The notes under the pieces were generated by a model, which made no database searches, was not told where the DNA came from, and saw nothing but the letters and a program-made list of their open reading frames with translations. From assembly GCF_032062105.1 (NCBI RefSeq), contig NW_026919765.1, forward strand, positions 62,001 to 126,000: DNA of 64,000 nt. Direction: 5' to 3'. Origin of the DNA: Saccostrea cucullata (taxonomy: Eukaryota). Shown piece after piece: positions 6,151 to 62,435 of the stretch (positions are counted from its first letter, which is position 1; every line of letters starts with the position of its first letter). Made by a program: the position numbers and the translations under genes.

Positions 6151-6371
6151 TGAATTATTTGAATTCATGTACATATTTAAGTAAACTTTTATATGACTTA
6201 TTATCTCTAAACCATAGATTCATATCAACTTGAAATTTATCTCAATAAATTTCGACTAACGATAAACAAAAAATATCATCTTAATATTTCTAATATTTCG
6301 TGAATGCCTGCTAGGCCTGCTAAAGCATGAAATACATGAATAAAATATATAATATGAAATGAAATACATGT

Positions 6372-7224: not shown

Positions 7225-7375
7225 AAAGGCCCATGGCGGGTGTGACGGGTCACCAGGGGATAAGTACTCCTCCATTGCATCTGAACCACATTCTTATGTT
7301 TTAGAGGCCCGTTTTTGTCCTGCTTTTAAATTTTTTAAATGTACTTTTAAGTTTATATTGTTCGTTACTTAGACA
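7225..7375 (+). mobile_element. Older Penelope-like 3'-end fragment, plus orientation (paralogue at ~15685-15830)
   Basis: catggcgggtgtgacgggtcaccaggggataagtactcctccattgcatctga...gaggcccgtttttgtcctgct...attgttcgtta. Confidence 0.65.
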
Positions 7376-10030: not shown

Positions 10031-10200
10031 AAGGATATGGAGATAACGAACAGTATTCAATCTCAAAATCCATAAAACACGAGCATTCACGGACCCCCGA
10101 AACATCAGAGGTGGGATCAGGTGCCATGGAGGAGTTAGCATCCCCTGCCGACCGGTCACAACCGCCGTGTGTTCCTTGTCATGATCAGGAAATAACGGAA
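10031..10200 (-). mobile_element. Penelope-like 3'-end insertion specific to unit B
   Basis: aaggatatggagataacgaacagtattcaatctc...gaggtgggatcaggtgccatggaggag...caggaaataacggaa, flanked by aatat on both sides; unit A (3115-3125) has the empty site. Confidence 0.75.
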
Positions 10201-11042
10201 AATATCCTTCCTAGTAGTTTATCCAAATATAAAACAGATGTGTCGTACTCTATATCGGTATTCAAACCTCAATCGGAAATATCGAGTCGACATAAGGATC
10301 AGAGTACCGATTTTTAATAACAGATAAATCTTAAATTCGATATGCATGCTTTTTGAAATTTTTTTTTTACTAATTATTTGACAAATCTTCCCACGATCTG
10401 CTGAATGATTCACTGTTAAAAACTTTAACACACATTTATTATAAAATATGAACACCATTAAACAAAACAAAAATAGATTTTTTAGACCCAAATAGTAATT
10501 AATTCAATGTCGACTTGTCTTTGACCTTATCTTCCAATTATTTAATAGAAGAATCTCGAAAAAGAAAATGAAAAGCATACTAATACACGTATGTACAGTA
10601 CATAGACATTAATATAACTTCTCTATCTTTGATACTATAATGATAATAATGTATCAAGGAACGGCTTGAAATGCAGAGATGGCATGAAACTATTGTTAAA
10701 TTAAATGATAAAAAAAAACTTTATCACAGAGCAGTATTATTTTCTTTTAAAAATACATACTCGTATAAAGATGAATAGAATCATTTTTAAATCTGTTGGA
10801 TGCATCATATATTGTAGAAGTAAAATAAAATGGGTAAAGTAAGTAGTATATAAATTGCAATTCTTTAGCAGTGTCATTTTTATTGGGTTCGAGATAAAAA
10901 TAAAAAAAAACCGTGCAGGCGTGAAATTGCATTTAGTATGACTTTATTTAACTTTGATCAAGATGATTCGTACTTTAGTACAGTGACATGAAGGTATGTT
11001 GGAGAAGGAAGTGAATGCATACACTCCTCCTAACATTTAAGT

Positions 11043-12269
11043 ATGGAGAACGATACAGATTACCAGTTGATGCTATTGGAACGATATTCCGATATTTTTT
11101 TGAGTAGCTCAATACTTATTCTTATTGGTGCTGTCGTAGGGATGATAGGAAACAGTACCATAATCGTTTTCTACTTTTTCCGCATCAAAGAGAGAGGGGA
11201 GCGTTACTTTATTCCGTTATTGGCCATTGTTGATCTTATTGCGTGTTTTACAAGTCCCCCTTTCTACATCATGGACAACACCTTCTTTTACAATTACCCA
11301 AGTGATGCTGCTTGTCGAATTCTCTCATTTCTTCAGATATGTGTTCCTGGAGCTTCAGGGCATATACTTTTGGTAATTACTATTCAAAGGTACCTTCTGG
11401 TATGCAAGCCATTCGGTCCGAAAATGACGTTAGTTTGGAAAAGAGTTTTCTTTGGAATAGCGTGTGGTTTTGCCTTGGCATATTCCGTCCCGTTGTTTGG
11501 AACATCGGGGGTTCTAAAGACTGTTGATAAGTTTATGAATCATAACGTTACGACAGAGATATGTAAATTTTCTGTTGACACTTCACCAGTAATTACTGTG
11601 TATTTTGGACTTTTGACACTTATTATGGTGGCAAACATTGGAATAACGGCTGGACTATATGTGCCTGTTTTGAGACAGGTTAAGCTTTCTTTTCAGCGAA
11701 AAATAAAAATGACAAGCATTCAAAATGAAAGTAATATTGCCTCTCATACCGAGTCTTCACATACAACGCAGTCAACTGAAATGGAACTTGACAAAGAACA
11801 TTATGGGAAAGATAGCACAGAGTTACAAGACGTTCATGTATCAACGAAAGAAAACTATCCAAACATTCATGAAGACATTAGGAAAACCTCCAAAGTGGCA
11901 TCCAATGAAATTAGTGAGGATGAAATAAAAAGTCAAAATCCTAATGGAACAGGTACAATGGAAAGCAAAAATACGCGCCGAAAAGATGGATCCGTGCAGA
12001 GAAGAATCACAGTCATGTTTCTTGTCATAATAATTGCTTATCTTTTGTCTTATATTCCACCGCTTGTCATTTTGATTCTGTCATATGCTATCGAGGATTT
12101 TAATTTCATCACTCTGTCGGAATCGGCCACAATAGCCTGGCTTTATCTTGCACGGTTCGTTTTTCTGAATCATATCGTTAATCCCTTTATCTACGGCTAC
12201 TTTGATACAAAATTTAGGGATCAATTACACATTTGTTTTATGAAGTGCAAAAGTAAATTCATTTCTTAA
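11043..12269 (+). CDS. Intronless class A GPCR, 408 aa (GPCR-2), paralogue of GPCR-1
   Basis: Same motifs as GPCR-1; 26 amino-acid differences by manual count (~94% identity). Confidence 0.95.
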   Translation: MENDTDYQLMLLERYSDIFLSSSILILIGAVVGMIGNSTIIVFYFFRIKERGERYFIPLLAIVDLIACFTSPPFYIMDNTFFYNYPSDAACRILSFLQICVPGASGHILLVITIQRYLLVCKPFGPKMTLVWKRVFFGIACGFALAYSVPLFGTSGVLKTVDKFMNHNVTTEICKFSVDTSPVITVYFGLLTLIMVANIGITAGLYVPVLRQVKLSFQRKIKMTSIQNESNIASHTESSHTTQSTEMELDKEHYGKDSTELQDVHVSTKENYPNIHEDIRKTSKVASNEISEDEIKSQNPNGTGTMESKNTRRKDGSVQRRITVMFLVIIIAYLLSYIPPLVILILSYAIEDFNFITLSESATIAWLYLARFVFLNHIVNPFIYGYFDTKFRDQLHICFMKCKSKFIS

Positions 12270-12510
12270 TAACTGATTTTAAACTCACATAAAGGATTGC
12301 AACATCTTGATATGAAAACAATATTTTGGAGCATTTGGGCGATGAAAAATAAAATATCTTTTGAATTAGGAAAACGTTATTCATATTGTATTCTTCATGA
12401 GCTATATTTGAATAAATTTAATTTGTAAATATTCTAAATAAGGTTGTATATACATTTCAGACATCTTATGGATACAAGTGTTTCTTTTTATATGCCTCCA
12501 AGATTTCATA

Positions 12511-12675
12511 CCGTATATACTCGCCTATAAGTCGGTTGTATTTAAGAAGCTTGTATATCAGATGGACTGACCTCATATAAAACCATACTTTTAATAGCTC
12601 GCCTATAAGTCGGATAAAGAGTTTTAGACCAGAGATTAACTCCCAAAAAAACGACTTATAGGGGAGTATATACGG
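12511..12675. mobile_element. Tc1/mariner (pogo-like) MITE, unit B only
   Basis: TIRs ccgtatatactcgcctataagtcg / cgacttataggggagtatatacgg with a TA target duplication; empty site in unit A at ~5440-5450. Confidence 0.85.
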
Positions 12676-13059
12676 TAACTATATTTTACCACATTTTACT
12701 AAACTGTTAATAGTAAAGTCTCATATTTATTTTTAAAGCATAACTATTATATGTCTTATTCCTGATATTTAAACACTTGGTTTTTAGCAGAAAATGTTTC
12801 AGAGCAGCACATGCCTCCAATCTTCTTTTTGATTGGATGAAAATATATATGGGGATAATGTTTCAAATCAATTAAATGATTTAAGTCTAAGTAACAGATA
12901 ATAAACATATTTCAATACAAATATTTTTCTAAGTATTTGGACATATAAAAAGGAATGTTACGGAAAACAGATAAAAATACTTTTGATTTTGTTCCGCAGA
13001 CGTAGATTAAATACACATATATTTATCATGTAAAATGTAATATATACATTCACTTGTTT

Positions 13060-13366
13060 TTTATACCCCCCGCTTGAAAAGAGGTAGGGTATATGGCAAT
13101 CGGTATTTCCTGTCCGTCCGTCCGTTCGTCAGTCTGTCGCTTTGGGATACCAATCTCTTATCCACAACTCTTATACCACTGAGTGAAATTTAATGAAACT
13201 TTCATAGAATATTTATTACATCTTGCCATTGTGCACCTCCTATTTTGCTTTTTGATACGACACATATTTTGGGTTTCCCTGCCAATCAAAACATGGACTC
13301 TGCCATTATATCCATATGGGAGGAGGAGTATCACTTATTAAGCTCATTGCTCACAATACCTCTTGT
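13060..13366 (+). mobile_element. Helentron-type non-autonomous element (HINE/DINE-like)
   Basis: ttatacccccc...ggtata, (GTCC)n microsatellite, 3' end gagtatca...gctcattgctcacaatacctcttgtt; unit A keeps only the last ~30 bp (5597-5628). Confidence 0.7.
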
Positions 13367-14104
13367 TTTCTCTACGACTCATGCAACAAGTGTTTCATAA
13401 TGACATAATCCATAACAACAAATTACATTTTATTAGATTCTTAAAGTCTACTTTCTTGGTTTTAAGGTTAATCTTTAAGTAAATTGTTCTCTCTGTATTC
13501 GAAACTATAACTGGATTTATATATAGCAAAATAAAGTTCGTGTAGGTATTACTTAAACAATGACAAAGCGTCTTCATATTTGTATCATTTATGAAAAATG
13601 TTTTGGAAGAAGCAACAAGATATTTAAAGCAACATAAAAAGTATTCATCTTGCAAACATGGTGAACTGTTTATTCAATTTATTACACTCCCGCTTAAATA
13701 GTAGGAGGGTATATAGTGATCGGGATGTCCGTCCGTCTATACATCCGTTCGTCTGTCTGTTACGCTTTAGGGTGCCCATCCCTTACATGCAACTCCTTTA
13801 TTACCACTAAATAAAATTTGATGATACCTTTACAGAATCTTTGTTACATAGAGTCATTGTGCACCTCCTATTTTACTTTTTGATCTGTCAATTATTTGAA
13901 TTCATGTACATATTTAAGAAAACTTTTATTTGAACTGTTGTCTCCACAACAAAGATTCATATTAATTTAAAATTCATCAAAATAAATTTTTACTAACAAT
14001 TAAACAACAAATCATCTAAATATTTCAAACATTTGGTGAATGCCTCCAAGGCCTGCTAAAGCTCTTGTAACATGAAATACATAGATAAAATATGAAATTA
14101 AATA

Positions 14105-14455
14105 TGTGGATGAAACGAACAGTATTCTAGCTCAAAAGTTCATAAAACATTACAAAATAGGAGCAGAGCAAACACGGACCTCCAAATCACCAAAGGTGGG
14201 ATCAGGTGCCTTGGAGAAGTGAACATCCCCTGCTGACCGGTCACACCTGCCGTGTGCTTCTTGTCATGATAAGAAAATAACGGAAAAAAATTCTTGGACT
14301 ACTTAGTGTGTATACACTGTACAATGGCCTAAAAAATCAGTATGAAATAAAGTCAGATAGCATTTGACTTAATGATATTGTATTTGCCGACAAGGTGATT
14401 GCATCAACCATAGAACTTACAAAATAATTACTTTAAACTAGACTGCTGATAAGTC
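14105..14455 (-). mobile_element. Penelope-like 3'-end fragment extending into the RT C-terminal coding sequence
   Basis: Aligns with 34055-34400; holds a single copy of the unit that is amplified five-fold at 6413-6620. Confidence 0.8.
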
Positions 14456-16397
14456 CTAGCACTAGTATTTTCAAAGTTCCAATAATGGTTAAAGTTTTTA
14501 AAATATTTTAAGTTTAAAGTTTAGGAACGACATGTCTTAAATGTTGATACTAAAATAATCGCCTTGTTACAATGAATATACATGAAATATAGCTTTAAAG
14601 TACATGTATCATAATCGACCTCAATAGAACTCGCAGACATGCAGTGTTTGTAAAAATCAATTATTTTAAGATAAAAATGACATTCGATCGCCAATTTGAA
14701 GGTCGAGGTTCCATGCTTCAAGACTTTTTAAGATGATTTTTTGCAGTTTTCCATGTAAAATTTTGTTAATTAAAGGACATGTACAGTGGGATGGTAATAA
14801 AGGAAAAAAAGCAGCAATATGCACGATATTTTTTGTTTTATTAGAGTGTGAATGAAGTATGCAAAGATAAACATTAAACATTATTAAAGCTCAACATTTC
14901 ACTGAAAAAAAAAATACAAATCACCTGAACAATTGAGGTGAATCCTTGTATATAAAACATGAAGTTTTATAAAGGAATCATGAAAATTAGGGCAAAATAC
15001 ATTTTCAGAATATAAGTTAAACTGTATCTCCTCCAGTTTTATTACTAGCGAATTTTTTGAATAATGATATAATAATTTGCACTAGACAATATTCCGCTAG
15101 AAATAATGCAAAACCACTATAAATTCATGTTTCTGCATTTCTTTTCATTGATTATATTTTATAAAAATAAATAGTTGCAAACAATTATTAAAAATCTGGT
15201 TTAAACGTGCTGAAATATATAATTCTGATTCCAAAAATTACAAAATAATTGTCACTTTTACAAATATATTTGAATTGAGAACATCAGAGATAATATGCAA
15301 TTTCATATTAACTTGAAATATAAAAGAGCACGTGTACGGAGTCTGTCATCCATCAGTTTCAAATAAGGATGTTTTCTTGATATTTTAAGATAGGAGAAAA
15401 TTAAAATTAAATTATATGACAAACGAGATGACTTAAACTTTTCCGTCATCACCTTTCCTTATTTATGCAGTTATATTCAGTTATCTCCCGCATATATGGT
15501 GTTTACATTTCCCATCTTATTCTATAACACAGAGCATGTTTCAAGTACAATCAATTTTTAACATTACATGTAACCTCTCACTGGGTCATATTTTGTCTCA
15601 ATCGGTTCATACCGTTTGCTTAACCATTGTTTCTATGCAGAAAATGACGGGAGTATGTTTCATCTAGTCTACTTGATGAAAAAAGGGCCCATGGCGGGTG
15701 TGACAGGTCACCAGGGGATAAGTACTCCACCACTACATCTGAACCACATTCCAATGTTTTAAAGGCCCGTTTTTGCTCTGCTTTTAATCTTTTTTACTTT
15801 AAAAGTTGAATATTGTTCGTTACTTAGACATTTTACTAACAAAGTAACAAAGATGTGGTACAATAATGTAGCCGTGCACACAATCAATTAGATTGTGTGT
15901 TGAGATTTTCACATTTGTATGTATTCGGATGTACAGTTGCAGGGAAAGGATCTATTAGACTAATATACAATTATACATGTACTAAATTTACTAGAAACCT
16001 TGATTGTTGATAAAATGTGATTTTCTAATGATTATTGTATTCTATCTACAAACTTGATACCATTAATAATTGGATAGTAGGTTCATAAGTTATTATATAA
16101 GGAAGACATGTTGACAGAAGAAACTTTTAACTATTTGTTAAAAAAAACCCTGAAATTTCGCTCAGTATTCAGGGAGATATTGTAATGAGCATTATGCCCA
16201 ATATAAGTAAGCTTTCTATAATGAAAGATGAGAGATATACAAATAATAAGAAAAACTCACGCGGAAACAAGCATAAATTATATATTCATTCTGATCAGAG
16301 TAGTGAGCGTAACAGGATGCAGGATTAAACGTTTTCTTCCTTTTGTCACTGAAAGTAGAATCTGATTAAAATAGATTATTTGTTACATATACAAGCC

Positions 16398-17630
16398 ATG
16401 GAGAACTCTACGAACTACACTTTATTGCTACAAAGTTCTTATTTTGATCTTGCTTTAGGTTGTACAATTCTGATTGGTATAGCAGCTCTTGTGGGAATAG
16501 CTGGGAATTTAATGATTATATTCTTTTATTTCTTTCGGATCAAAGACCGAGGAGAACGTTACTACATTCCGATTCTGGCAGTTATTGACTTTCTGGCAAG
16601 CATCACCAGCTCCTTATACAACATCATGGACAACTCTTATTTTTATAACTACCCCAATGACGTCATCTGTCGACTACTGAGCGCCCTACAGGTGTGTGTA
16701 CCGGGAATATCTGCTCATGTACTATTGTTGATATCAATACAAAGATACCTTCTAGTGTGTAAACCATTTGGACCAAAAATGACGTTATATTGGAAAAGAG
16801 TTGCACTGGGACTAGTTTGTGGAATTACAGTAGTCTATTCAGTTCCAATTTTGGGAACAGCTGGAGTGAAAACTTCCCAAGAAGTGTACCTAAATCACAA
16901 TGTTACTGTCAAGATATGCAAATTTTCGGCTGATTCATCGTCATACATAACGATTTATTTTGGAATTTTGTCCCTTATCATAATAGGTAACATTGTAGCA
17001 ACGGGAGCCTTTTATATTCCTGTTCTTAAACAAGTAAGAATAGCATTTCGTTCTTTTCGTAGAAAGGTAGCTAACAAATATAAAGAAGACACCGTTCCCA
17101 CAGAACTAGAGGCTGTTTCGGATTCAAACGCCGAGCAAATTGAAATGAAAACAATCTCGGTCTCTAATGCTTCAACTCCAGCGACAAATGAACTCCCAGT
17201 TTCAAATTTATCTCCAGGTAAAAATGCAGAACCCGGAAGTATTACAGAGACAGACGATACAGAGGATGTTGGTACTAATAATCCAAACATTTCAAAGAAT
17301 GAGAATACAGATGACAAACCGAAAGAAATGAAAGAAACCAAGTCAAAGCGTAAATCAGTTCAAAGGAGGTTAACTATGATGTTCTTTGTGCTTATCTTGG
17401 CATACATTATCTCTTACATTCCTCCCCTCGTGTTTTTGGTACTAACATACGCCATCGAAAATTTTAATTTTTTAACCTTAACAAAGACAGAGTCTGTGCT
17501 GTGGATATACCTTCCTCGTCTGGTGTTTTTGAACCATGTGATCAATCCATTCATATATGGATATTATGATACAAAATTAAGAGATCAACTGACAACGTGT
17601 TTTAAAAGGAAAAGACACATCATCAACTGA
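16398..17630 (+). CDS. Intronless class A GPCR, ~410 aa (GPCR-3)
   Basis: ATG at 16398 in gccATGg context (the ORF-track start at 16380 is a TTG); MENSTNYT sequons, GN, LAVID, QRY, SYIPP, NPFIY; aataaa at 17681. Confidence 0.95.
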   Translation: MENSTNYTLLLQSSYFDLALGCTILIGIAALVGIAGNLMIIFFYFFRIKDRGERYYIPILAVIDFLASITSSLYNIMDNSYFYNYPNDVICRLLSALQVCVPGISAHVLLLISIQRYLLVCKPFGPKMTLYWKRVALGLVCGITVVYSVPILGTAGVKTSQEVYLNHNVTVKICKFSADSSSYITIYFGILSLIIIGNIVATGAFYIPVLKQVRIAFRSFRRKVANKYKEDTVPTELEAVSDSNAEQIEMKTISVSNASTPATNELPVSNLSPGKNAEPGSITETDDTEDVGTNNPNISKNENTDDKPKEMKETKSKRKSVQRRLTMMFFVLILAYIISYIPPLVFLVLTYAIENFNFLTLTKTESVLWIYLPRLVFLNHVINPFIYGYYDTKLRDQLTTCFKRKRHIIN

Positions 17631-18304
17631 TTTAATATTCTAATATTCTATAACTCTTGTAAACTGTCCCTTTACTCTTAAATAAAAGTTTAAAAAATAC
17701 ATTATTCATGTAGAGGTAAAATACTGTCTGATATAGCTATCAAGATAAAGCTATCTGATATATATGATGTAAACTAAGTTTTTGCTCTATTTAAATGGAT
17801 TTGGCAGGTTTTCTAGGACGAATGAAATTATTCAGGCATTTTAAAAAAGGTAAACAAGATATTAAGCATTAACGTCCAGACACTGGCTATTTTTATTGAA
17901 AGACAATGTATTGATGGGTATTCAAAAATTCTGGACAACATTTAAACAGTTAAAGTCAAAATTTAAAGGCCTTTTGCATATGTTGAGAATGTATGAGAAA
18001 TACGTCACATCCCTAACAAGAAGTTACTTACAGTAGTTAAATATAATTAACTATATTAGATATATTGATTTTTATCTGATTTTTGTCCCCCAGTTTTTTG
18101 AAGATTTAAAGCTATAGTGAATCTGTGTAATAAAATCAAAAACATAAAATCTTTTGACTTTTCAACTTTTTCATAAAAACATTCCCCACAATAATCTCCA
18201 GCATTTCTTACATCATTGACAGCTGCTTTTCAAATGAAAAAGAAACTTTAAAAAATACTTACCTTGTCATTGTTTATTTGCAAAATTACTTCGGTAAGAT
18301 TAAT

Positions 18305-18490
18305 GATATGGGGATAACGAACAGTATTCAATATCAAAGTCCATTAAAAAAAACAAAATAGGAGCAGAGCAAACACGGATCTGAAAAACATCAGAGGTGG
18401 GATCAGGTACCATGGAGGAGTGATCATTCCCTGCCAACTGAACACTCGCCGTGTGCTCCTTGTCATGATCGGGAAATAACGGAAAAATCC
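18305..18490 (-). mobile_element. Penelope-like 3'-end fragment
   Basis: gatatggggataacgaacagtattcaa...tcagaggtgggatcaggtaccatggaggagtgatc...cgccgtgtgctccttgtcatgatcgggaaataacgg. Confidence 0.8.
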
Positions 18491-19863
18491 CTGCAGAAGA
18501 ATTTCCGAGATATAAGATTAACATTACAGGCGTGCGTTGTTCAAGTACGACTGAGTAAACCATTGTTTTTTGTCACAAGTGATCTAGATATTGACGTCAC
18601 GTTCACATTGCGACGTCAAATTATGGAGTAAACTATTTCATTACATATTCTCTCTACAGAACGTATTATATGACTCAGTGTGTGCCAAATTTCATTCTGA
18701 TCTGAACTTTGGTTGTACAAATACAAGTACACTGTATAGACGTAGTTCAGGCACTTTTTAATTACCCCTTGTATTATCAATTAACAATTATCTTATGGTT
18801 ACTTTAATTTTGTTTCTTCGATTAAACATCGCTGAATATCATCAATATGGCAATTTATAATGACGATGAAGCATCTGGCCATTTAGATGATTAGAACAGG
18901 CATTTCCGAAACCTGTTCCTTACCATTACAGTGTCTTATTTTATCTTACTTCATTTTAATCATTTTCGAATTCGTGTCTAATATATTGTTCAAAACTATA
19001 AACTCTATTTACAAAAAGGAGTTAGGTCTCTAATGTCAGAGGCAACATCATGTGGAGGACTTGTTAGAACAGTTTTTAGCATATTTTAGCATATTTAAAT
19101 AATTTTTAAAACTTAAGACTAATCGTTAGGTACAATATACATTTCTTTAACACAAATAGACATATGTTCTTAAAATAAACATATTAATGGAAAATAATAG
19201 TCTGTTTGAAAACAATACACCATGCACAACACCGTTAGGGAAATACTTTGGTGATGGGATCCTGAATTAGATATTCAGTATGTAATCATGGCGCTGAACA
19301 CTTAGAAAATACCATCAAGAAAAAGTTTTGCATTCTGTAAGTATTAATCTGTATTGTGTGTAGATCCGATGTTATTGTGTACCATACTAAAATTATCATA
19401 CATGTACATGTGAAAATGTTATTTCAATAAAAAAAAAAATAGTTTACAGCTTCAATGCTCTACTATTCGTATAACAGATAAACATGCCCTCTTTGAACTG
19501 TCAGATGGAAGATGGACTTGGATTGATGATATACCATATTATTTTTTATAAATATATATCTTTACATTAAACTACAGGGATATTTTTTATATCTTATCTG
19601 TATATTGTATTACACTGTTTTAAATTCTTAAATACGGACATATTAAATGGCTTATTAAATCAGAAAATGTAGGGCTTCAAAAGATAGATTTTAAAGTGAA
19701 ACTCAACTTAGGGTAATGTCAACGTTATCAGGATAAGGAAGTAAACATTTGTTTTAAATGATTTCTAAAACACAAAATGATTTTGCTTAAACTTAAGTAT
19801 ATCATTACCTGAATAAGAAAGAGAAGATTTATATCATAACAGAGTCCACCTTTTCTGTGCAAA

Positions 19864-21069
19864 ATGCTGAACAAAACCAACGCTTTAGTTATACTGCAGG
19901 AAAGTTACCTGGAATTAAGCTTACCTAACACCGTGTTAATCATCATGGCTGCTGTGATAGGGGTGACAGGAAATTGTTCTATCATAGTGATATATTTCTA
20001 TCGAATCAAAGAAAGAGGAGAGCGTTATTTCATCCCGCTACTCGCACTTGTTGACCTCGTGGGAAGCCTTACTATTGCTCCGTTCTACGTGATAGGAAAT
20101 CTTTATTTTTACGTGTATCCGAATGACAACGTTTGTCGAATCTTATCATTCTTCCAGTTTCTTGTCACGGGGATCTCAGCACACGTCCTGTTGCTGATAT
20201 CTATTCAGAGGTACCTCTTAGTGTGTAGACCATTTGGACCGAGAATGACACACTTCTGGAAAAGAGTTTCCTTTGCATTGGTGTGTATCTTCAGTTTAGC
20301 ATATTCTGTTCCAGTTCTGAAAACATCCGGAGTGAAAATAATGGATGATATCTACATGAACCAAACAATTTCAACTAGGGTCTGCAAATTTTCCGTGGCA
20401 AATTCAACCGGAGTTGTAGCTTATTTTGGACTGTTAGTTTTAATTTCAGTGTTGAATATTGTTATGACTGCAGGTTTTTATTCCCCTGTTCTGCGACAAC
20501 TAAGACTGTCAAAGAACATTATTTTCTCCACATGCACCCCTTTAGACAAAAAACGATGTAACCAATACTACTCATTCTCTGGCTCCTCAGTTTCAAATTC
20601 TGCTGGTGAAGAAACAGATCATTACGTTAATGAACCTAGTCATCCCACAACAGAACATCACAGTGAGAAATCAATCCCTACGGGTACAGAAACTAAAAAT
20701 GTCTCTATTTCTCAGGATAATTCTAGTCAGACTAAATCAGAGGAAACTCGAGCTGAAATCCCAAACAATGTGACAACCATGGATATTCGCTTCCGCCCAC
20801 AAAATGTAAGATTACAGAGGAGAATAAGTATCATGTTTCTTGTTGTTATCGTAACATATATTCTGTCCTACATTCCTCCCCTTATTCTTCTTCTACTCAC
20901 GTACACTATCAAGGATTTCAACTACATCACTCTGACCAAAGGAGAGACATTAACCTGGATTTATCTACCGCGCCTTCTGTTTATAAATCATGTTGTTAAT
21001 CCGTTTATATACGGGTATTTTGATGCTAAATATAGAGAGCAGTTGAGAAATTGTTTTAGAAGACAATGA
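19864..21069 (+). CDS. Intronless class A GPCR, 401 aa (GPCR-4)
   Basis: NKT sequon, GN, LALVD, QRY, SYIPP, NPFIY; clearly the same family as GPCR-1 to -3. Confidence 0.95.
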   Translation: MLNKTNALVILQESYLELSLPNTVLIIMAAVIGVTGNCSIIVIYFYRIKERGERYFIPLLALVDLVGSLTIAPFYVIGNLYFYVYPNDNVCRILSFFQFLVTGISAHVLLLISIQRYLLVCRPFGPRMTHFWKRVSFALVCIFSLAYSVPVLKTSGVKIMDDIYMNQTISTRVCKFSVANSTGVVAYFGLLVLISVLNIVMTAGFYSPVLRQLRLSKNIIFSTCTPLDKKRCNQYYSFSGSSVSNSAGEETDHYVNEPSHPTTEHHSEKSIPTGTETKNVSISQDNSSQTKSEETRAEIPNNVTTMDIRFRPQNVRLQRRISIMFLVVIVTYILSYIPPLILLLLTYTIKDFNYITLTKGETLTWIYLPRLLFINHVVNPFIYGYFDAKYREQLRNCFRRQ

Positions 21070-22876: not shown

Positions 22877-23649
22877 ATGGTTTTCCTTCCTCTGTGTTTG
22901 ATTGTCTTTCTACAAACATCCATCATAGAAGGTAAATATGTCTTTGCTAAAAAAAAATCAATCCTTGTAAAAGTACCTCAACTTTTATTGTTCATTTAAA
23001 ATATAATAAGATGTTGCACAAACGGTTCATACGTAAAATATGCGATTTTAATAAGACTGTATTGATATAAAACTAAGGTTCGTATTACAAAAGCAAGATA
23101 TTGAGAAATAATATATTCAACTAAAGACAATTAATGTTTAAACAAATTTCTTAATTTTGAGTCACAAAAAGTGTTGCAGTAAGAACTGCAATGTTACAAA
23201 ATGTCAGGAATTGATTTTAAACGTCTATCTTTTGATTCACAGAGGTCTACTCAAGTCCTGCCATAGGATTTTCAGTGCAACTTTCAAGAGACACTCATTT
23301 GGGACACGGACAAGCGATCAGGTACGACAAAATTATTACTAATTACGGTAACAGTTACAACAAATGGACTGGACACTTTGTTGCTCCAAAGAAAGGATTA
23401 TACTTGTTTTCCTGTTCCATAATGGCATACAACGATGAAACAATTCATATTCAGATGGTAAAGAATGGTATCAAAGTATCCACGATTTATTCCAATCCTT
23501 CTAGATTTGATCACAGCTCACAGACAGTTGTGTTGGTCCTACAAAAAGGAGATAGCGTGTGGACAAGACAGGCATATTCAGGTAGACATCTACATAAAGT
23601 AGCGGTCTATAATATGTTTTCTGGTGTCCTCATTTCAGAAAACATTTGA
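22877..23649 (+). CDS. Secreted globular C1q-domain protein (signal peptide plus gC1q only), 153 aa, two coding exons: 22877-22931 and 23243-23649
   Basis: Exon 1 MVFLPLCLIVFLQTSIIE ends at G|GTAAAT; acceptor ttcacAG| gives a phase-1 join into E-VYSSPAIGFSVQL...; gC1q motifs: YDKIITNYGNSYN..TGHFVAPKKGLYLFS, VVLVLQKGDSVW, YNMFSGVLI. Confidence 0.9.
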
Positions 23650-50365: not shown

Positions 50366-53300
50366 CACAGGAAAAATGTCCACATGTGTTAAACATATGT
50401 TTGGTTTCACATGTGTTCAACACATGTTTTATACATGTACTACATGAGTGTAAATAAACACATGTAAAATATGTGTTTCATTTATATGTAAAACATATAT
50501 AATATACACATGTTATACACCTGTGAGATAATATATATGTTAAACACATGTTTTTCACCACACATGAATAACACGTATTATATATATGTAATATATGTGT
50601 GCGAAAATACAGATGAATTATACATGTTTAATTTATATAAAATATATGTGTATTCATATACACATGTTATACACATGTTAAGTTTTATCTCATATGTGTG
50701 TGTACATTAATTCAAAAGAATTTGTAAATGTTAGTAAAATTTTACTCATGTAAAGTTTTACTTTGTTTATCCCCCCCCCCCCCCCCCCTTTCCCTTCTAA
50801 AAAAAAAAAAACTTTCACAATTTTTTTTCTGTAATAATGCATTTATCAGACAAAATTGATAAAGAATGAATTCATTTTCTTTTCATTTTAAATCTTTTGG
50901 GCTTGGCTTACTTCTTGAGTAAAATTAAAATAATTCCGTATTTGTCTTCGGGCCGGTTTTGTCTTTTATCGGATGAAAATGTACGTCATTTTTGACGTCA
51001 CTGCTGCAGCAGACGTGCTGGATGTATTGGAAAGGTAAGTGATCTCGAAACAATTTTTAAAAGACTTTTAATTCATATTGTTTAAATATCATTTCATTAT
51101 AGTTACAGGTGCGTATGAACCTTCTATATACATGTAATACTCTTATCATTGTGACTTGTCATGCATTTTGCAAACCTAACGATAGTGATCTGTAGAATTT
51201 TGGTGAAAATGTTTCTGACTGAATGTAAGCACGGGCACTGGAAGTTAATGTAAATATATTGTATGTGTATGTATAAAAAAGACCCTTCTTTTTTTTATAC
51301 ATACACATACTATATTATTTATATTAACTTCCAGTGCCCGTGAATGTAAGCGGTTACATGTTAGGCTAAAGGCATTACTATTTTTTATAATTTGTATACA
51401 AGTAAGTAATTTTGGATAAATTTGTTTCTGAATGAACGTAAACATTACATGTTAGGCTATTTTTTAAAGGCATTATTGGTTTTCCTTTTGTTACGTACTG
51501 ATATGAAAGTGAAAGTAGAAACCTTGAAACCATTGCGACTGTCAGTTGGTGTTTATGTATGTTGAGATTGCTGTCAAGTCGATTCTTTCATCAACTTAAT
51601 AACAAGTGTTTGTTTTTATGGCCTATAGATGCATGCAGTAACCTGAGTTCAGTGTCACAGTGCTGCGTCTAAAAAGCCCAAAGCTGATAAGACTGGCGAT
51701 TGATCCTAAAGCTGATTTGACAGAAGATTGCATCTTCACATATATTAAAGGTAAAAATAAATACTACTTGCAATAAAAAATCAAAGTAAACATCTGTAAT
51801 GACCCCTTCATGACAAAATATTTCTTGATACATTGTAATTTCTTTTTGTTCCTTTATAATTCTACATTATATTGTTTGCATGACTTCATAAATAATAAGT
51901 CCAACTCAATACTACAATAATTTTATTCTATATTATAAAACAGTTTTAATGCAGTGCACTTTTAAAATATGGAAAGTATGAATAGAATTTGTTGGCTTTA
52001 AAAGCTATGAAACTGGTACATGTACTGTAAATGACTTCAGGGGGGAGGGGGGGGGGGGGTATTGAATTTTTGAATTTCAGTTAAAAATTAATAATAACAG
52101 TGACATCCAACTTTCAAGGTACAAGTACATGTGCATATGTGTTGATTGTTGAAAGTACATCAGCTAGCTAATCCATTAGATACTTACATCTATTATGTAC
52201 CGGTATTCATTACCTGACATTTATTATTTTTTTCCAACACTAGAGAACATAGTTTCTGGTAAAATGTAATATATTAATTAAGACTATTAAGAACCTACAA
52301 ACATGTACTCTCTCTTTTTTATATTTGTAGTTTTGTAGTTTAATTAAGTTAATTAAGTTATGCTTAGAAGATATCTACTGCATGAATATTTGTTTTACAG
52401 GTTCAATATACAGTCAGCGTCTCATAAGAATAAATCCCAAGATCCAAGACTTGCTTAAAAGCTTAATTAAGGTAACTATATATATACACACTGTTAAATA
52501 AACTTTGTTATATTCTTTCCAACAACGTTTGGGATATCCTGGAATCACACTGTCTGTTTTTCTGCCTGTCTACTTCTCTGTAGTATTTTTGGTCCAAATA
52601 TAAAATAATTGTGTCAGAATCTTCTTAATTTTTGGCAATATGAATTAGTAATACTGTTTGAACATTCCAAATTTAATTGTCAAAATCAAAAAAAAAAATG
52701 CTTTTTATGACTTTATTATGAAGCATATCTTCCAACAGTGTAATTGTCTTGCAAATTACATCATAGGATTCCACAAAACACCTAGTATAGCATATATAAC
52801 ATTAGTTTTATCTCTTATCATATCTCTGTTGGTGAATTAGGCATACATTTGTTTGCTGAACTTTAATATTACTTGTAGAATTGATTTTGTAATTTAAGAA
52901 TTGTTTTATTTTTACTTTTGAAATTTTTGTAGAGACCATTCTGTGCCACAAAGAAATTGTTCAGGAAAGGGAGAAATGGTGGATTTGCATTTTGGGTACA
53001 GTTCAAAGAGAGTTCAAAATGGTCAAGCTCGTGGAAGATCAGAGGGAGGACAACTGAAGAAAACTGAAAGATACAGAAGGAAAAAGAACAAGAAAATATA
53101 TGAAATAATTATGAAATTGGGAGGATGTACACAATTTTGTCTGCATTTGACCTGTAAAGATTTAATTCCCATTCTTATTTGTATGCTGTAATATCAAATA
53201 ACTTGATTTTTCATAAATTTACAATAGAGAATACATGACAAATGTTATATGTGATATTTCAATTTTGCTTTGGACACTTTCATGTCAAATCATATAAATT

Positions 53301-54435: not shown

Positions 54436-55510
54436 TCTATTATAGTGATATATTTCTATCGAATCAAAGAAAGAGGAGAGCGTTATTTCATCCCGCTACT
54501 CGCACTTGTTGACCTCGTGGGAAGCCTCACTATTGCTCCGTTCTACGTGATAGGAAATCTATTTTTACGTGTATCCGAATGACATCGTGTGTCGAATATT
54601 ATCCTTCTTCCAGTTCCTTGTCACAGGAATTTCATCACACGTCCTGTTGCTGATATCTATTCAGAGGTACCTCTTAGTGTGTAGACCATTTGGACCGAGA
54701 ATGACACACTTCTGGAAAAGAGTTTCCTTTGCACTGGCGTGTATCTTCAGTTTCGCATATTCTGTTCAAGTTCTGAAAACAATGGATGACATCTACATGA
54801 ACCAAACAATTTCAACTAGGGTCTGCAAATTTTCCGTGGCAAATTCAACCGGAGTTGTAGCTTATTTTGGACTGTTAGTTTTAATTTCAGTGTTGAATAT
54901 TGTTATGACTGCAAGTTTTTACTTCCCTGTTCTGCGACAACTAAGACTGTCAAAGAATATTATTTTCTCTACATGCACTCCTTTAGACAAAAAACAATGT
55001 AACCAATACTACTCATTCTCTGGCTCCTCAGTTTCAAACTCTGCTGGTGAAGAAACCTTAATGAACCTAGTAATCCCACAACAGAACATCACAGTGAAAA
55101 ATCAATCCCTACGGACCTACACAGTGCCAGAAACTAAAAATGTCTCTATTTCTCAGGATAATTCTAGTCAGACTAAATCAAAGGAAACTCGAGCTGAAAT
55201 CCCAAACAATGTGATAACCATGGATATTCGCTTTTGCCCACAAAATGTAAGATTACAGAGGAGAATAAGTCTCATGTTTCTGGTTGTTATCGTAACATAT
55301 ATCATGTCCTACATTCCTCCCCTTATTCTTCTTTTACTCACGTACACTATAAGGGATTTCAACTACATCACTTTGTCAAAAGGAGAGACCTTGACCTGGA
55401 TTTATCTACCGCGCCTTCTGTTTATAAATCATGTTGTTAATCCGTTTATATACGGGTATTTTGATGCTAAATATAGAGAGCAGTTGAGAAATTGTTTTAA
55501 AAGACAATAA
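54436..55510 (+). pseudogene. Disrupted duplicate of GPCR-4
   Basis: Near-identical to 19978-21069, but a ~232-bp deletion removes the ATG and most of TM1; also a 2-nt frameshift at ~54560, a 15-nt deletion at ~54781 and a -10/+10 indel pair at ~55057/~55120. Flanks 54275-54435 and 55510-56395 match 19610-19745 and 21070-21810. Confidence 0.9.
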
Positions 55511-57959: not shown

Positions 57960-58171
57960 CCACTCCTTCAGGATCCACCACTTGTGCCTCTGTAGAAAGA
58001 CGGAATCACATGATTCGGCATAACCTGTTGTGAACCCCTTGCAGCAAACGGGGAAGATCTAGATCAGTTAATGAGATGAATCATGAATTAACGAGACGGA
58101 GTCAACTCGAGGGTTTTGGCGAAATCCTGCACTTGACACCTCACACGTAGTTTGGGCCATTGACAGTAAGT
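57960..58171 (+). promoter_or_regulatory. Possible promoter / non-coding first exon of the serpin
   Basis: Locally GC/CpG-richer stretch ending in ACA|GTAAGT (58166); an acceptor ttatttcAG| lies at 60564, 33 nt before the serpin ATG. Confidence 0.4.
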
Positions 58172-58389
58172 AAAACACAACAAAATGATTTTTATATTTA
58201 TTTATTTTATTATAAGATTATGGTTTGAGGAAAACAGACTTTTCTGCCTATCAATAACTCAGAATTATGGCGAAGTGTAACTGTCATATTATTGAATGAA
58301 ACATCTTAACTTTGATGGGTTAACTTAGTACATATTTCTTATTAGGGTCATGGTTATTTTCGGCGATTTTAGGTTGAACATATTTATTA

Positions 58390-60105
58390 CTTTTTGTCCC
58401 CCACTTTCGCGAAAGCGAGGGGGCATTAAATCTCTTTCGTCTGTTCGTCTGTCTGGCTGTCCGTCAGTCACAAAAACTTTAACCTTGCCCATAACTTTTG
58501 ATTTAGTGGAACTATGACTTTCATATTTCATATGTGTATTCCTTCTGACAAGACCTTTCTTTGAGAACATCAAATTTTCTTAACCTTTTTTGACCAACTT
58601 TTACACAAAAATTCCAAACTTTTACTTTGGCCATAACTTTTGAATGGAAGGTACTAGGACTTTCATATTTCACATATGTATTTTCTGTGGCATGACCTTT
58701 CTTTTCATACAAACAACTTTAACCTTTTGATCTTGACCTTGGAGACTTACGTACTTATGAAAAAACTATAACATTGACCATAATTTTTGAACGGTAAGGG
58801 CTAGGGCTTTCGTACTTCATATATTTTATTCTTGTGAGACGACTTTCATTGGATACCAAGAACTTTGACCCTTTGATCTTGACCTTGGATTCTTAACTAT
58901 TTTTTAAAAACTTTAACCTTGGTCACAACTTTTGAACGGTAGATACTAGGACTTTCATTTTTAACATATGTATTGTTTGTGACAAGACCTTTCATTAGAT
59001 ACCAACAACTTTGACTTTTTGACCTTGATTTTGGAGTGATACTTTTATGAAAAAACTTTAACCATGAAAAACTAATTAACTGTAAGGGTTTCGTACTTAC
59101 ATATGTAATCCTTGTGACAAGACCTTTTACTGCAAAAAATAATTTTTTGACCTTTGACATTGACAAAACCTTAAGTTTTAACTACTTTTTAAAACCTTTA
59201 ACCTAACTGTCACAGTTTTTTGAACGGTAAAGATATGCCTAGGACTTTTTCATATTTCAAATAGGGTTTTCTTTGTGGCAAGACCTTTCATGGGATACCA
59301 ATAACTTTGACCTTTTGACCTTGAAGATTTACTTACTTGGGAAAAAACTTTAAAATGACCATTAAATTTTGAACGGTCTTAAGGACTAAAATTATTTTAA
59401 TCTTCACATATGTAATCCTTGTGAAATAACAATTTCATTTAATCTTACCAAAAACTTTAACCCTTTGACTTTCACTTTGGAGTTTTAACTACTTAAAAAA
59501 AACTTTAACCTTTACATACTTTTTGAACGCGTAGGGTTAGCGTTTCCATCCTTCATATATGTATTACTCGTGACAAGACCTTTCTTAAGAATTCAACAAC
59601 TCAGATCCTTTCAATTCGGAGTTTGACCTACCTTTCAAAAATTTATCCTCAACTATAACTTTTGAACAGGTGGTGATAGGGATTTTTATTTCACAGTCGT
59701 ATTTCTTCTGAGAAAACCCCTAATTTGGGTAATAATAGATTTAATTTGCATTTAAGAATATCTTAATCTTCGTTATGTTGCCATTCGAGGTCATCAGTAT
59801 TTCACAAACATATCTTGTTCCTTATATTGAGAAGAGATAGGGCTTTCATATATGACATGTGCATTACCTGTGACAAGTTAATTTCCAAGCACTTTTGAAA
59901 TAATTATTTCAATATATTGACCTTGACCTTCATGATTGACCTTATTTTTCAAAACAAAAATCAATTTCAATGATAATTTCTATTAAAATAAATGACATAA
60001 CTTAATGATAGGGTATTCATAATAAACACAATATGTCTTAAAAAAATATCTCACCCATAAAGACACCGAAAGCGGGGGACCGCAATTCTTTGAATTTGCT
60101 TGTTT
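58390..60105 (+). mobile_element. Helentron-type element with a diverged ~145-150-bp tandem array (~9 units)
   Basis: 5' ttttgtcccccactttcgcgaaagcgagggg hairpin, (gtct/gtcc)n, recurring aaaactttaaccttg..cataacttttgaacgg..tagg.ctttcat..tgtgacaagaccttt, 3' cgaaagcgggggac.gcaattctttgaatttgcttgtt. Confidence 0.8.
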
Positions 60106-60597
60106 TGTCAATATTTGATCCATCGGCCACATTCACTTTTAGTATAGACCATCCATTCCATAATGCCAGAATCAGATGTTAAATATTTCCGTTAAGCGTT
60201 GCATACACGTACGTCTTTGAATCAAATATTTTCATCTTACAATTTATTTCAGTGAAGGAACTAATAGAAATGAAATAATTTTCGTTATAATAAGATATAG
60301 TGCTTTAATTAGTATTTCAAAATCGTGATGAAAATTAGATGATGAAGTCGTCTATAAATTTATTGTTACTTATTATAATTTTTAATTTTTTTAACTGCCT
60401 TTCCTTTCATACAACATATATCCATTTTAAACTTATTTTAATTTAAATAAGTATTGATATCCATGTGTACTTATATATATATGGAAATACACATAACCTT
60501 TACAATTCAAATAAAAAACAAGGAAATTTCCGTGAGTTTTTAATAAATAATTTGATTATTTCAGACAGGACTTGAGATCAAAGGACACATCCCAACC

Positions 60598-61944
60598 ATG
60601 CTCAGAGATTCCTATCATCAACAATTTTCAGCATGTTTGGTATTTTTACTTGTCTACTTGGCTTCACATAAAGTAACGACAACTGATCCTGCCTTTCAAA
60701 ACTCCGACACTGCCGCAGCCTTCACAAAAGCAAACAAAGAATTTACGTTGAATCTCTTAAAGCAGTTACCAGCGGAATCCAATGTCTTCTACTCGCCCTT
60801 TAGTATTGCTACGGCCCTCGCAATGGTTCAGTTGGGAGCAGGAGCAGAAACACTTAAAGAAATGAATCAGGCTCTACATTTTGGCACACTGGGTAAAGAC
60901 ATTTACTCTGCATTTGGCACGTATTTAGAGTTTCTTTCGAATTCTACTGGAAACAACACACTTAATACAGCAAACAGAATCTACCAAAGCACGAGGTTTA
61001 CAGCAGAAGAAACATTTCTCCAAAGTTGTATCAAATATTTTAACGCCACGGTAGAATCAGTGGATTTTGCCCAGTCTGAAGTAGCAAGTGATAAAATTAA
61101 TTCCTGGGTTAGTCAGAAAACAGCAAACAAAATCCAAGATCTTATTCCAGCAAATGCACTAAGCATTCAAACCTTAATGGTTCTCGTAAATGCTATCTAC
61201 TTCAAAGGAATCTGGAACAGTAAGTTTGAAGTTAAGCACACGAAAGAAATGGAATTTCGAAATGGCAAAGTAAAGTTCATGACGGACATGATGTACCAGA
61301 AGGATTCTTTTAAGATTTGCCATGTTTCAGACTTGAACCTTGACATCCTAGAACTTCCCTACGAGGGCGAAACCATAAGTATGTTAATTCTTCTTCCTAC
61401 CTCTGTAGATGGTTTACCGGCTGTGGAGAAGAGTTTGACAGAGACTGTCCTTAGAAATGCAATGAGCACTCTAAGAAAACAAGAAGTTAAAGTGTACCTT
61501 CCAAAATTCAAAATGGAGTCTGCCTTTCAGTTGAAGTCTTACCTTTCTGCATTGGGTATGTCATCAGCATTTGACCAAAGAAGAGCGAATTTTTCAGGTA
61601 TATACAGAGATGAAGAGGTGTTCATCAGCGAGGTTTTCCATAAAGCATTTGTCGATGTCAACGAGGAAGGCACAGAGGCCGCTGCGGCCACGGGAGTCGT
61701 TATTACTTTGACATCAATCCGAATCCCTCTCGAGTTTCGAGCAGATCACCCGTTTCTGTTTTTCATTCGTGATACTGTAAATGACGTCATACTATTTGCC
61801 GGAAGATTTAATAATCCCGTCGGTGTTAAAGGGATTCGGAATTCAAATAGTGCGTGTAATTTATGCAAAATGTCAAATGGGATTACATGCGTGTTCGTAC
61901 TGCTGATATATGTTTTGAAGAGCATGCTTTTCAAATCAGAATGA
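60598..61944 (+). CDS. Inhibitory-type serpin, 448 aa, single coding exon, with a signal peptide and a hydrophobic C-terminal extension
   Basis: NVFYSPFSI, LVNAIYFKGIW, VYLPKFKME, hinge EEGTEAAAAT, signature FRADHPFLFFI, ILFAGRFNNP; N-terminal h-region ACLVFLLVYLA; aataaa at ~62136. Confidence 0.97.
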   Translation: MLRDSYHQQFSACLVFLLVYLASHKVTTTDPAFQNSDTAAAFTKANKEFTLNLLKQLPAESNVFYSPFSIATALAMVQLGAGAETLKEMNQALHFGTLGKDIYSAFGTYLEFLSNSTGNNTLNTANRIYQSTRFTAEETFLQSCIKYFNATVESVDFAQSEVASDKINSWVSQKTANKIQDLIPANALSIQTLMVLVNAIYFKGIWNSKFEVKHTKEMEFRNGKVKFMTDMMYQKDSFKICHVSDLNLDILELPYEGETISMLILLPTSVDGLPAVEKSLTETVLRNAMSTLRKQEVKVYLPKFKMESAFQLKSYLSALGMSSAFDQRRANFSGIYRDEEVFISEVFHKAFVDVNEEGTEAAAATGVVITLTSIRIPLEFRADHPFLFFIRDTVNDVILFAGRFNNPVGVKGIRNSNSACNLCKMSNGITCVFVLLIYVLKSMLFKSE

Positions 61945-62435
61945 AATCCAATTAAGGATTCTTAATATTTTGTTTACCGGAATGAAAAAGATGCTGATGC
62001 AGTAGTGGCAGCCTACAAAAGTGTCATAATAACAACCTTTATCACCTATGCCATGACTTTGATTTTGTCATTTTGTAATTGAACCTGTTATTTGTTCTTT
62101 GATATATCTGTATAAGCCAGCAGATTCCCTGTGAGAATAAAAGTATTACTTTTACTTTAGTTGTAACATTTTTTATATATCTTCAGCGTTTTTTTAAAAT
62201 ATCTAATAAATATGAAATAAATTTGATAAAGTATGTATTATTTATTTATGGAATAAAGATATTATTTCTATATAGATCGTGTTCTCATAATTCTAAAAGT
62301 GATTTTAATGAACACTCCTGTCCCGGTGTTGAAAATGATTAAAAGAAAATGGACCTTGTTATTGACAACGTGGTATATTTATTCCAAATTTTAAATTAAA
62401 GGTATTTTGTATTGTCATAAAAGCTCTGAAAACGG

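What the first reader, a model, noticed from the sequence alone, without database searches (positions are those of the whole stretch)
60598..61944. Candidate GPI- or membrane-anchored inhibitory serpin
Seen: the serpin fold ends at GRFNNP (residue 407), but the ORF runs 41 aa further (61819-61941): VGVKGIRNSNSACNLCKMSNGITCVFVLLIYVLKSMLFKSE. This is a small-residue cluster (N-S-N-S-A, omega-site-like), a ~9-residue spacer and a 13-residue hydrophobic block. The protein also has an N-terminal signal-like h-region and sequons (NST, NNT, NAT, NFS). The hinge EEGTEAAAAT is inhibitory, and counting from P17 gives P1-P1' Thr-Ser. Established: most animal serpins are soluble (cytosolic, secreted or ER-retained), and signal peptide + omega site + spacer + hydrophobic tail is the GPI-attachment pattern. 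Inference: a cell-surface-tethered protease trap. Caveat: the charged end (K..KSE) is imperfect for a GPI signal and could be a short TM anchor.
Basis: partly seen in the sequence, partly recalled or inferred. Interest (0 to 1): 0.8.

Follow-up and report, generated by a model that had tools for sequence, protein, structure and literature searches.

The report
Oyster serpin with GPI-like tail
A rock-oyster protease-trap protein (serpin), whose nearest relatives are held in the ER by a KDEL tag, instead ends in an expressed, conserved tail that looks like a GPI lipid-anchor signal; if so it sits on the cell surface, which I found no report of for a native animal serpin.

Summary
Window 60598-61944 encodes a 448-aa serpin (Pfam 45-407) with a signal-like N-terminus, an inhibitory hinge, P1-P1' Thr372-Ser373 and a 41-aa tail. 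The genome is most likely Saccostrea cucullata (inferred). The tail is no artefact. A spliced transcript and RNA reads run through it to the same stop. Two S. echinata genes keep it in frame (dN/dS about 0.33, while the 3'UTR has 11-16 indels). A more distant Ostrea-like serpin has a matching tail. All five fit a GPI-signal layout with an aligned Asn as omega (N417). The nearest relatives are KDEL-ending ER serpins. Sister paralogues that stop right after the fold still carry a frameshifted relic of the tail in their 3'UTR. So one oyster family appears to use three addresses: ER, membrane and secreted. GPI anchoring is the best reading (about 0.55) but is predicted only. The propeptide is long (31 aa) and ends in charged residues, unlike oyster alkaline-phosphatase signals. 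No GPI predictor or assay could be run. I found no paper on a native GPI-anchored serpin, and this scan has not noted one on other DNA.

The parts
58107..58165 (+). Non-coding exon 1 (5' UTR)
   Evidence: First 59 nt of transcript contig L003 match here. Homologous stretch upstream of both S. echinata genes.
58166..60564 (+). GT-AG intron, 2399 nt, containing repeats
   Evidence: Joint skipping 2399 nt in three raw RNA runs. Donor and acceptor read.
60565..62190 (+). Exon 2: the whole coding sequence and the 3' UTR
   Evidence: L003 aligns to 60565-62181 at 97%. RNA depth falls to about zero after about 62210.
60598..60684 (+). Predicted signal peptide (aa 1 to about 23-29; cleavage site uncertain)
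   Evidence: Hydrophobic 11-mer KD 2.84. Candidate cleavage after 23, 28 or 29. Same position as in KDEL-bearing paralogues. SignalP not run.
60730..61818 (+). Serpin domain, aa 45-407, with sequons N115, N119, N149, N331
   Evidence: Pfam PF00079; PDB serpin matches; AlphaFold2 model, mean pLDDT 82.6.
61663..61689 (+). Inhibitory-type hinge P17-P9 (E356-A364)
61711..61716 (+). Predicted scissile bond P1-P1' Thr372-Ser373 (P4 Ile, P2 Leu)
   Evidence: alignment to PAI-2.
61819..61845 (+). Linker V408-S416 (about omega-10 to omega-1); low-confidence coil in the model
   Evidence: pLDDT below 50 for 411-431.
61846..61854 (+). Predicted omega site N417 with omega+1 Ser and omega+2 Ala
   Evidence: Aligned Asn is the omega candidate in all five tailed proteins: N-S-A, N-S-A, N-G-A, N-I-A, N-G-S.
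61855..61878 (+). Spacer C420-N427
61879..61917 (+). Hydrophobic block G428-L440 (13 uncharged residues, KD11 2.95)
61918..61944 (+). Polar/charged end K441-E448 and TGA stop; the feature that fits a GPI signal least
62136..62141 (+). AATAAA, likely poly(A) signal
   Evidence: a cluster of read ends at 62167 and loss of depth shortly after.

Best explanation
A GPI-anchored, cell-surface inhibitory serpin of rock oysters, derived from the family of KDEL-tagged secretory-pathway serpins. SHOWN: the gene is spliced and expressed with the tail; the tail is kept in frame and under purifying selection between Saccostrea species; its layout matches a GPI signal. INFERRED: the signal peptide takes the protein into the ER; it is N-glycosylated; GPI transamidase cleaves after about N417 and swaps the 31-aa propeptide for a GPI anchor; the serpin is displayed on a roughly 10-residue stalk. 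There a protease cuts Thr372-Ser373 (or a neighbouring bond such as Leu371-Thr372), the loop inserts into sheet A and the protease is trapped covalently at the membrane. The loop has lost the Lys-Arg convertase bait of the KDEL relatives. The Ile/Leu/Thr bait suggests elastase-, subtilisin- or chymotrypsin-like targets, either microbial/parasite or host; this is the weakest inference. The short paralogues most likely lost the anchor by a stop plus a one-base deletion and became secreted.
For: Transcript and reads through the tail. Tail dN/dS 0.32-0.35 against the two S. echinata genes, with no frameshifting indel, while the 3'UTR has 11-16 indels in about 230 nt. Simulated P of pN/pS this low is 0.02-0.05 for P0002. 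All five tailed proteins pass a layout rule written from the NetGPI paper's description (10.1101/838680); 4 of 5 oyster alkaline-phosphatase ends also pass it. Hydrophobicity matches those controls (KD11 2.2-2.95 vs 2.2-2.9). The block is too short for a transmembrane helix in the relatives: 10-12 uncharged residues, KD19 1.2-1.3. A 22-aa in-frame duplication in P0003 lengthens the stalk and leaves the signal intact. Sequons at four aligned positions are shared by the window and P0009 and absent from six of the seven oyster KDEL serpins checked; the seventh has one. The Ostrea-like P0009 tail matches the P0002 tail (p 0.0002; best non-self hit). Relic tail in the 3'UTR of short paralogues (p 0.001).
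Against: The propeptide is 28-31 aa, at or above the 20-29 of the oyster controls. It ends in 7-8 polar residues with 2-3 charges, where the controls have none, and charged residues weigh against GPI in NetGPI. In the window itself the block plus KSMLF reaches KD19 1.9, in transmembrane range. The selection test is not significant for P0003 in the gap-free comparison or for the relic. The P0009 tail has no significant DNA similarity to the Saccostrea tails, so it could be convergent. No trained predictor and no experiment. My layout rule was set after seeing the sequence.
Confidence: 0.55

Rival explanations
1. The tail is an uncleaved short transmembrane or membrane-embedded helix that holds the serpin in the ER or Golgi (or at the surface), a membrane-bound replacement for KDEL retrieval.
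For: Window KD19 1.91 and a continuous predicted helix 426-447. Basic residues follow the block in the Saccostrea proteins. The nearest relatives are ER-retained (PMC2556349). Short transmembrane helices are typical of ER/Golgi proteins (own knowledge).
Against: Relatives have only 10-12 uncharged residues and KD19 1.2-1.3. P0009 has two Glu directly after the block. No conserved di-lysine motif. The conserved omega-like Asn motif at a fixed distance would be unexplained.
Confidence: 0.2
2. The tail is functional but not an anchor: a sorting signal for secretory granules (compare the 13-aa C-terminal signal of neuroserpin), a Cys-mediated partner-binding segment, or an inefficient GPI signal that mostly yields secreted protein.
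For: Neuroserpin's C-terminal extension sorts it to dense-core vesicles (PMC2556349). Cys420 is conserved in the Saccostrea proteins. The last 11 residues are amphipathic in P0002 and P0009 (moment 0.49-0.58). Sister paralogues survive without the tail.
Against: The amphipathic moment is low in the window and P0003 (about 0.2). P0009 has no tail Cys. Oyster alkaline-phosphatase propeptides also contain Cys. The order linker-omega-spacer-hydrophobic block is conserved.
Confidence: 0.2
3. The tail is a recent neutral stop-loss into AT-rich 3'UTR, or an assembly error.
For: AT-rich read-throughs are often hydrophobic (own knowledge). The homologous DNA is 3'UTR in the short paralogues, and the tree does not fix the direction.
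Against: An independent transcript has the same stop. The frame is kept across species at 70-74% nucleotide identity with dN/dS below 0.4. Only 0.3% of random read-throughs fit the layout.
Confidence: 0.05

Closest known systems
KDEL/HDEL secretory-pathway serpins (lancelet Spn-1, sea urchin Spu-Spn-1, Drosophila Spn4A, neuroserpin lineage; PMC2556349)
   Same: Signal peptide, inhibitory hinge, C-terminal address after the fold. The oyster, scallop and other KDEL-like serpins are its nearest relatives (about 58-68% and 41-47% identity), several with the same Met-Met-Lys-Arg/Ser loop as lancelet Spn-1.
   Different: No KDEL; a 41-aa hydrophobic tail instead; Leu-Thr/Ser in place of Lys-Arg/Ser; extra N-glycan sequons.
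GPI-anchored protease inhibitors of other folds: TFPI, RECK, CD109 (listed as human GPI-anchored proteins in PMC10569057)
   Same: Protease inhibitor or inhibitor-family protein held at the cell surface by GPI.
   Different: Kunitz, Kazal-motif or alpha-2-macroglobulin folds (own knowledge), not a serpin suicide trap. That review's text has no occurrence of 'serpin'.
Miropin of Tannerella forsythia (10.1101/2025.09.05.674453)
   Same: Lipid-anchored, surface-displayed inhibitory serpin with Thr at P1 and several usable reactive bonds; P0009 has the same Lys-Thr at P2-P1.
   Different: Bacterial; anchored as a lipoprotein (at the N-terminus, own knowledge), not through a C-terminal signal. An analogy only; no special kinship tested.
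Bacterial serpins with PEP-CTERM-like C-termini (for example P0159, precomputed PF07589)
   Same: Serpin followed by a C-terminal sorting signal with a hydrophobic block.
   Different: Prokaryotic exosortase-type signal with a full helix and basic tail; database proteins only, weak NCBIfam scores.
Clade B (ov-)serpins, the source of NCBI's names 'serpin B6-like' and 'B8-like' for the orthologues
   Same: Best PDB matches are PAI-2 and leukocyte elastase inhibitor.
   Different: [quoted passage not shown]

Membership tests
Serpin superfamily | Full serpin domain with conserved shutter, breach and gate residues | tested here: met
   PF00079 E 3e-119 over profile 2-370. Invariant S66-P67, W206, H348, P385-F386, G402-R403. 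Model with serpin-like secondary structure.
Inhibitory serpins | Hinge E-E/K-G-T-E followed by small residues, and a 17-residue P-side loop | tested here: met
   E356-A364; P1 T372.
Inhibitory serpins | SDS-stable covalent complex with a protease | not testable with these tools
   Needs recombinant protein.
GPI-anchored proteins | N-terminal signal peptide | tested here: met
   By hydropathy and by homology to KDEL-bearing paralogues only; SignalP not available.
GPI-anchored proteins | Omega residue S/N/G/D/C/A, omega+2 G/A/S, polar linker and spacer | tested here: met
   N417-S-A; conserved in five proteins; criteria from 10.1101/838680.
GPI-anchored proteins | Hydrophobic stretch starting near omega+10 | tested here: met
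   Starts at omega+10 to +14; KD11 2.2-2.95, as in the oyster alkaline-phosphatase controls.
GPI-anchored proteins | Hydrophobic stretch runs to the C-terminus without a charged tail | tested here: inconclusive
   7-8 polar residues with 2-3 charges follow the block; the controls have none. Some validated signals such as glypican-4 end in charged residues (from memory, not checked).
GPI-anchored proteins | PI-PLC release or dependence on transamidase | not testable with these tools
   Experiment needed; membership therefore remains a prediction.
Type I single-pass membrane protein | Hydrophobic helix of about 19-21 residues conserved in relatives | tested here: not met
   KD19 1.9 in the window but 1.2-1.3 in P0002, P0003 and P0009.
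ER-retrieved membrane protein | C-terminal KKXX or KXKXX motif | tested here: not met
   Ends are FKSE, RRST, ITSE and SRSV.
KDEL secretory-pathway serpins | C-terminal KDEL-type signal | tested here: not met
   present in the paralogues.
KDEL secretory-pathway serpins | Dibasic P2-P1 convertase bait | tested here: not met
   Leu-Thr.
KDEL secretory-pathway serpins | Linkage to PDCD10 | not tested
   Neighbours seen here are GPCR and C1q ORFs; PDCD10 was not searched.
Clade B (ov-)serpins | No cleavable signal peptide and no C-terminal extension | tested here: not met
   Both extensions are present.

The most novel reading that the evidence does not exclude
A natively GPI-anchored animal serpin, of which I found no earlier report. 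It would have arisen in the common ancestor of Ostrea and Saccostrea from an ER-retained convertase inhibitor, and later reverted to secreted forms by losing the anchor, so that one young gene family covers ER lumen, cell surface and fluid by editing only its C-terminal address and its bait loop.
Probability: 0.4. Interest if true: 0.72.

Novelty: new variant of a known kind. Interest (0 to 1): 0.57.

Why it matters
Animal serpins are described as cytosolic, secreted or ER-retained, and reach membranes through cofactors or receptors (own knowledge). A lipid-anchored one would put an irreversible protease trap directly on epithelial or haemocyte surfaces of a filter feeder exposed to protease-secreting bacteria and parasites. 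It would also show that the serpin's large conformational change works with a C-terminal tether. The family offers a small natural experiment in retargeting: KDEL, GPI-like and short forms coexist in one genome, with the lost anchor still readable in the 3'UTR. The tailed and short versions can be compared directly in cell culture. The reach is limited: so far it is seen only in a few oysters, and GPI-anchored inhibitors of other folds are known.

Tried and rejected
Assembly error or unspliced intron: rejected. Splicing that removes the tail: none among the joints listed, and depth does not drop over the tail, but 140 weaker joints were not shown. Origin of the tail from the 3'UTR of KDEL genes: tested at DNA level, best p about 0.05 among 39 comparisons, not accepted. 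A relic in the paralogue P0034: similar only over the first codons, not significant. Tree position of P0009: grouped with the O. edulis KDEL serpin in a quick tree, unresolved in the careful tree, and a single tailed clade is not rejected (p-AU 0.44). Further tailed relatives: none in a tail-region word search, in the P0009 region search, in the profile search of 1.84 billion representatives (50% clustering hides paralogues, so this is weak) or in the ESM Atlas. No Crassostrea/Magallana, scallop or other bivalve hit carried such a tail. Caveolin synteny with S. echinata was not found in the 101 kb read from the window to the contig end. Literature searches found no native GPI-anchored serpin and no paper on these genes; the library lacks most subscription journals. 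The glypican last exon could not be identified and 5'-nucleotidase loci could not be fetched, so the in-species control rests on alkaline phosphatases only. My first P-numbering was off by one and is corrected.

Full report
OBSERVATION. The ORF at 60598-61944 (+) encodes 448 aa. Pfam Serpin covers residues 45-407 (E 3e-119), and the best solved relatives are PAI-2, tick serpins and leukocyte elastase inhibitor. An AlphaFold2 model gives a confident core (mean pLDDT 82.6), a disordered loop at 359-376, a low-confidence stretch at 411-431 and a terminal helix at 426-447. The hinge runs E356-A364 and P1-P1' is Thr372-Ser373 (one search was off by one). The 41-aa tail is at 61819-61941.

ORGANISM. 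Three proteins named Saccostrea cucullata by NCBI translate letter for letter from loci of this genome, and a fourth is a cluster member with the same name. The genome is therefore most likely the S. cucullata assembly (inference). The gene lies alone in an array of rhodopsin-type GPCR and C1q ORFs; no other serpin lies in the 101 kb from the window start to the contig end.

THE TAIL IS EXPRESSED. A 1682-nt contig from a public run (L003) encodes a 97% identical protein with the same tail length and stop. Its first 59 nt map to 58107-58165 and the rest to 60565-62181, so it is spliced across a GT-AG intron. Three oligo-dT RNA runs show the same 2399-nt joint. Their depth over the tail and the start of the 3'UTR is as high as over the end of the core, and it vanishes after about 62210, just past an AATAAA at 62136. 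These reads come from other individuals at 90-99% identity and may include close paralogues; the tissue is not given. The 92-nt leader was joined only inside a script, to check for upstream ATGs; there are none.

THE TAIL IS CONSERVED. Two tandem S. echinata genes (XP_061178772.1 and XP_061178771.1; P0002, P0003) align over the whole length and share the non-coding first exon. Against them the tail has 70-74% nucleotide identity, dN/dS 0.32-0.35 (core 0.18-0.21) and no frameshifting indel, whereas the adjacent 3'UTR has 11-16 indels in about 230 nt. In simulation the pN/pS against P0002 is unlikely under neutrality (P 0.02-0.05); a gap-free comparison with the last repeat of P0003 is not significant. 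P0003 carries an in-frame 22-aa duplication of linker, omega region and spacer. A fifth protein, P0009 from a JGI contig, is 62% identical and closest in DNA to Ostrea edulis (77%). Its tail matches that of P0002 at the protein level (p 0.0002; best non-self hit for its last 89 residues) but not at the DNA level. It also shares the loop pattern G-V-V-I-T-x-T/S and four sequon positions with the window. The core tree leaves P0009 unresolved and does not reject one tailed clade (p-AU 0.44). One origin is plausible but not shown.

WHAT KIND OF SIGNAL. The published layout of a GPI signal is a polar linker, an omega residue, G/A/S at omega+2, a spacer and a hydrophobic stretch from about omega+10 (10.1101/838680). 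A simple rule built on this is met by all five proteins with the aligned Asn as omega (N417 here), 28-31 residues from the end. It is met by 0.28% of random read-throughs and 0.8% of long open stretches of oyster non-coding DNA. The rule was set after I saw the tail. As an in-genome control, four of five alkaline-phosphatase C-termini pass it; these are presumed GPI signals by homology only. Their hydrophobicity equals that of the serpin tails, but their propeptides are 20-29 aa and carry no charge in the last ten residues, against 2-3 charges in the serpins. A true transmembrane helix is less likely, because the relatives have only 10-12 uncharged residues and a 19-residue hydropathy of 1.2-1.3, and there is no di-lysine motif.

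FAMILY CONTEXT. The genome holds many serpin genes whose domain lies in one open frame. The closest oyster, scallop and other relatives have a signal peptide and end in KDEL-type signals, several with a Lys-Arg/Ser loop. That is the secretory-pathway type described for lancelet Spn-1, which inhibits proprotein convertases (PMC2556349). The tailed genes form a well-supported Saccostrea clade (100/99) with paralogues that stop 3-8 residues after the fold. In three of these (L009, L010, L022) the DNA after the stop is homologous to the tail but shifted by a one-base deletion. In L022 it still reads as an open 32-codon copy with the omega-like cluster and hydrophobic block (p 0.001); in L010 it has a stop and in L009 a deletion. 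Loss of the anchor is the simpler reading, given this decay and the tail in P0009. Gain from a 3'UTR is not excluded, since selection on the relic is not significant and the order within the clade is unresolved (p-AU 0.31).

MECHANISM. Shown: expression, conservation and layout. Inferred from established pathways: ER entry, glycosylation, transamidase cleavage near N417, surface display on a short stalk, and covalent trapping of a protease that cuts the loop. The target is the weakest step. P1 Thr with P2 Leu and P4 Ile excludes the furin-type bait and suggests elastase-, subtilisin- or chymotrypsin-like enzymes; the bacterial surface serpin miropin has Thr at P1 and a broad spectrum. Odds: GPI anchor 0.55; uncleaved membrane helix 0.2; functional but non-anchoring tail 0.2; neutral or artefact 0.05.

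COMPARISON AND NOVELTY. It is a serpin and by sequence an inhibitory one. It fails the defining tests of the KDEL type and of clade B, whose name NCBI gives the orthologues. It works most likely like TFPI, RECK or CD109, which are listed as human GPI-anchored proteins (PMC10569057) but have other folds. Surface-anchored serpins are known in bacteria (miropin), and PEP-CTERM-like serpins turned up among the hits. Seven literature searches found no native GPI-anchored serpin and nothing on these genes, within a library that lacks most subscription journals. No further tailed relatives were found, with the limits those tools state. Two unchecked notes of this scan describe other membrane-retargeted families in the same genome; they are parallels, not support.

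VERDICT. A real, expressed, selected C-terminal signal on an oyster serpin; probably a GPI signal, not proven. New variant of a known kind; interest 0.57.

Noticed in passing
window 3980-21069 and 54569-55510; more on contig C1902 beyond the window: Tandem array of single-ORF rhodopsin-family GPCR genes (four full, about 401-416 aa; one truncated), with further broken copies downstream; C1q-domain ORFs at 23275-23649 and about 9 kb past the window end.
   Followed up: partly
L022 (G000:C20826, about 52770-52870), L010, L009: The 3'UTRs of the short serpin paralogues hold a frameshifted relic of the GPI-like tail, in three stages of decay.
   Followed up: yes
window 61709-61716: In RNA run X21 about 14-22% of reads show 6 nt missing in the reactive loop; S. 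echinata P0003 has a loop 3 residues shorter. Suggests an allele or paralogue with a different bait.
   Followed up: no
P0145, P0149, P0159, P0160, P0164, P0175, P0226, P0231: Apparently bacterial serpins ending in a PEP-CTERM-like signal (Pro-Glu-Pro, hydrophobic helix, Arg cluster); some have precomputed dockerin-type PF00404 hits. A prokaryotic parallel of C-terminal anchoring.
   Followed up: partly
P0013, P0014, P0021, P0023, P0024, P0027: Crassostrea/Magallana paralogues also lose KDEL by stopping one residue after the fold, some also lacking a signal peptide in the annotated model; address loss looks recurrent in this family.
   Followed up: no
L001:573-7864: The S. echinata tailed genes lie next to two caveolin genes; no caveolin match in the 101 kb around the window gene, so local synteny differs.
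   Followed up: partly
window 32176-32883 (-): 235-aa ORF made of about 48-aa tandem repeats; Pfam hits are weak or repeat-driven; probably a repeat element.
   Followed up: no
window 49212-49880: About 690-nt element, 69-70% identical to stretches downstream of both S. echinata serpin genes; no ORF; probably a dispersed repeat.
   Followed up: partly
window 37202-37759 and 46187-46606 (-): Two related ORFs (185 and 139 aa) with no Pfam match.
   Followed up: no
L057 (G000:C9919): One alkaline-phosphatase last exon ends without a hydrophobic signal, unlike four others; a possible secreted or broken copy.
   Followed up: no
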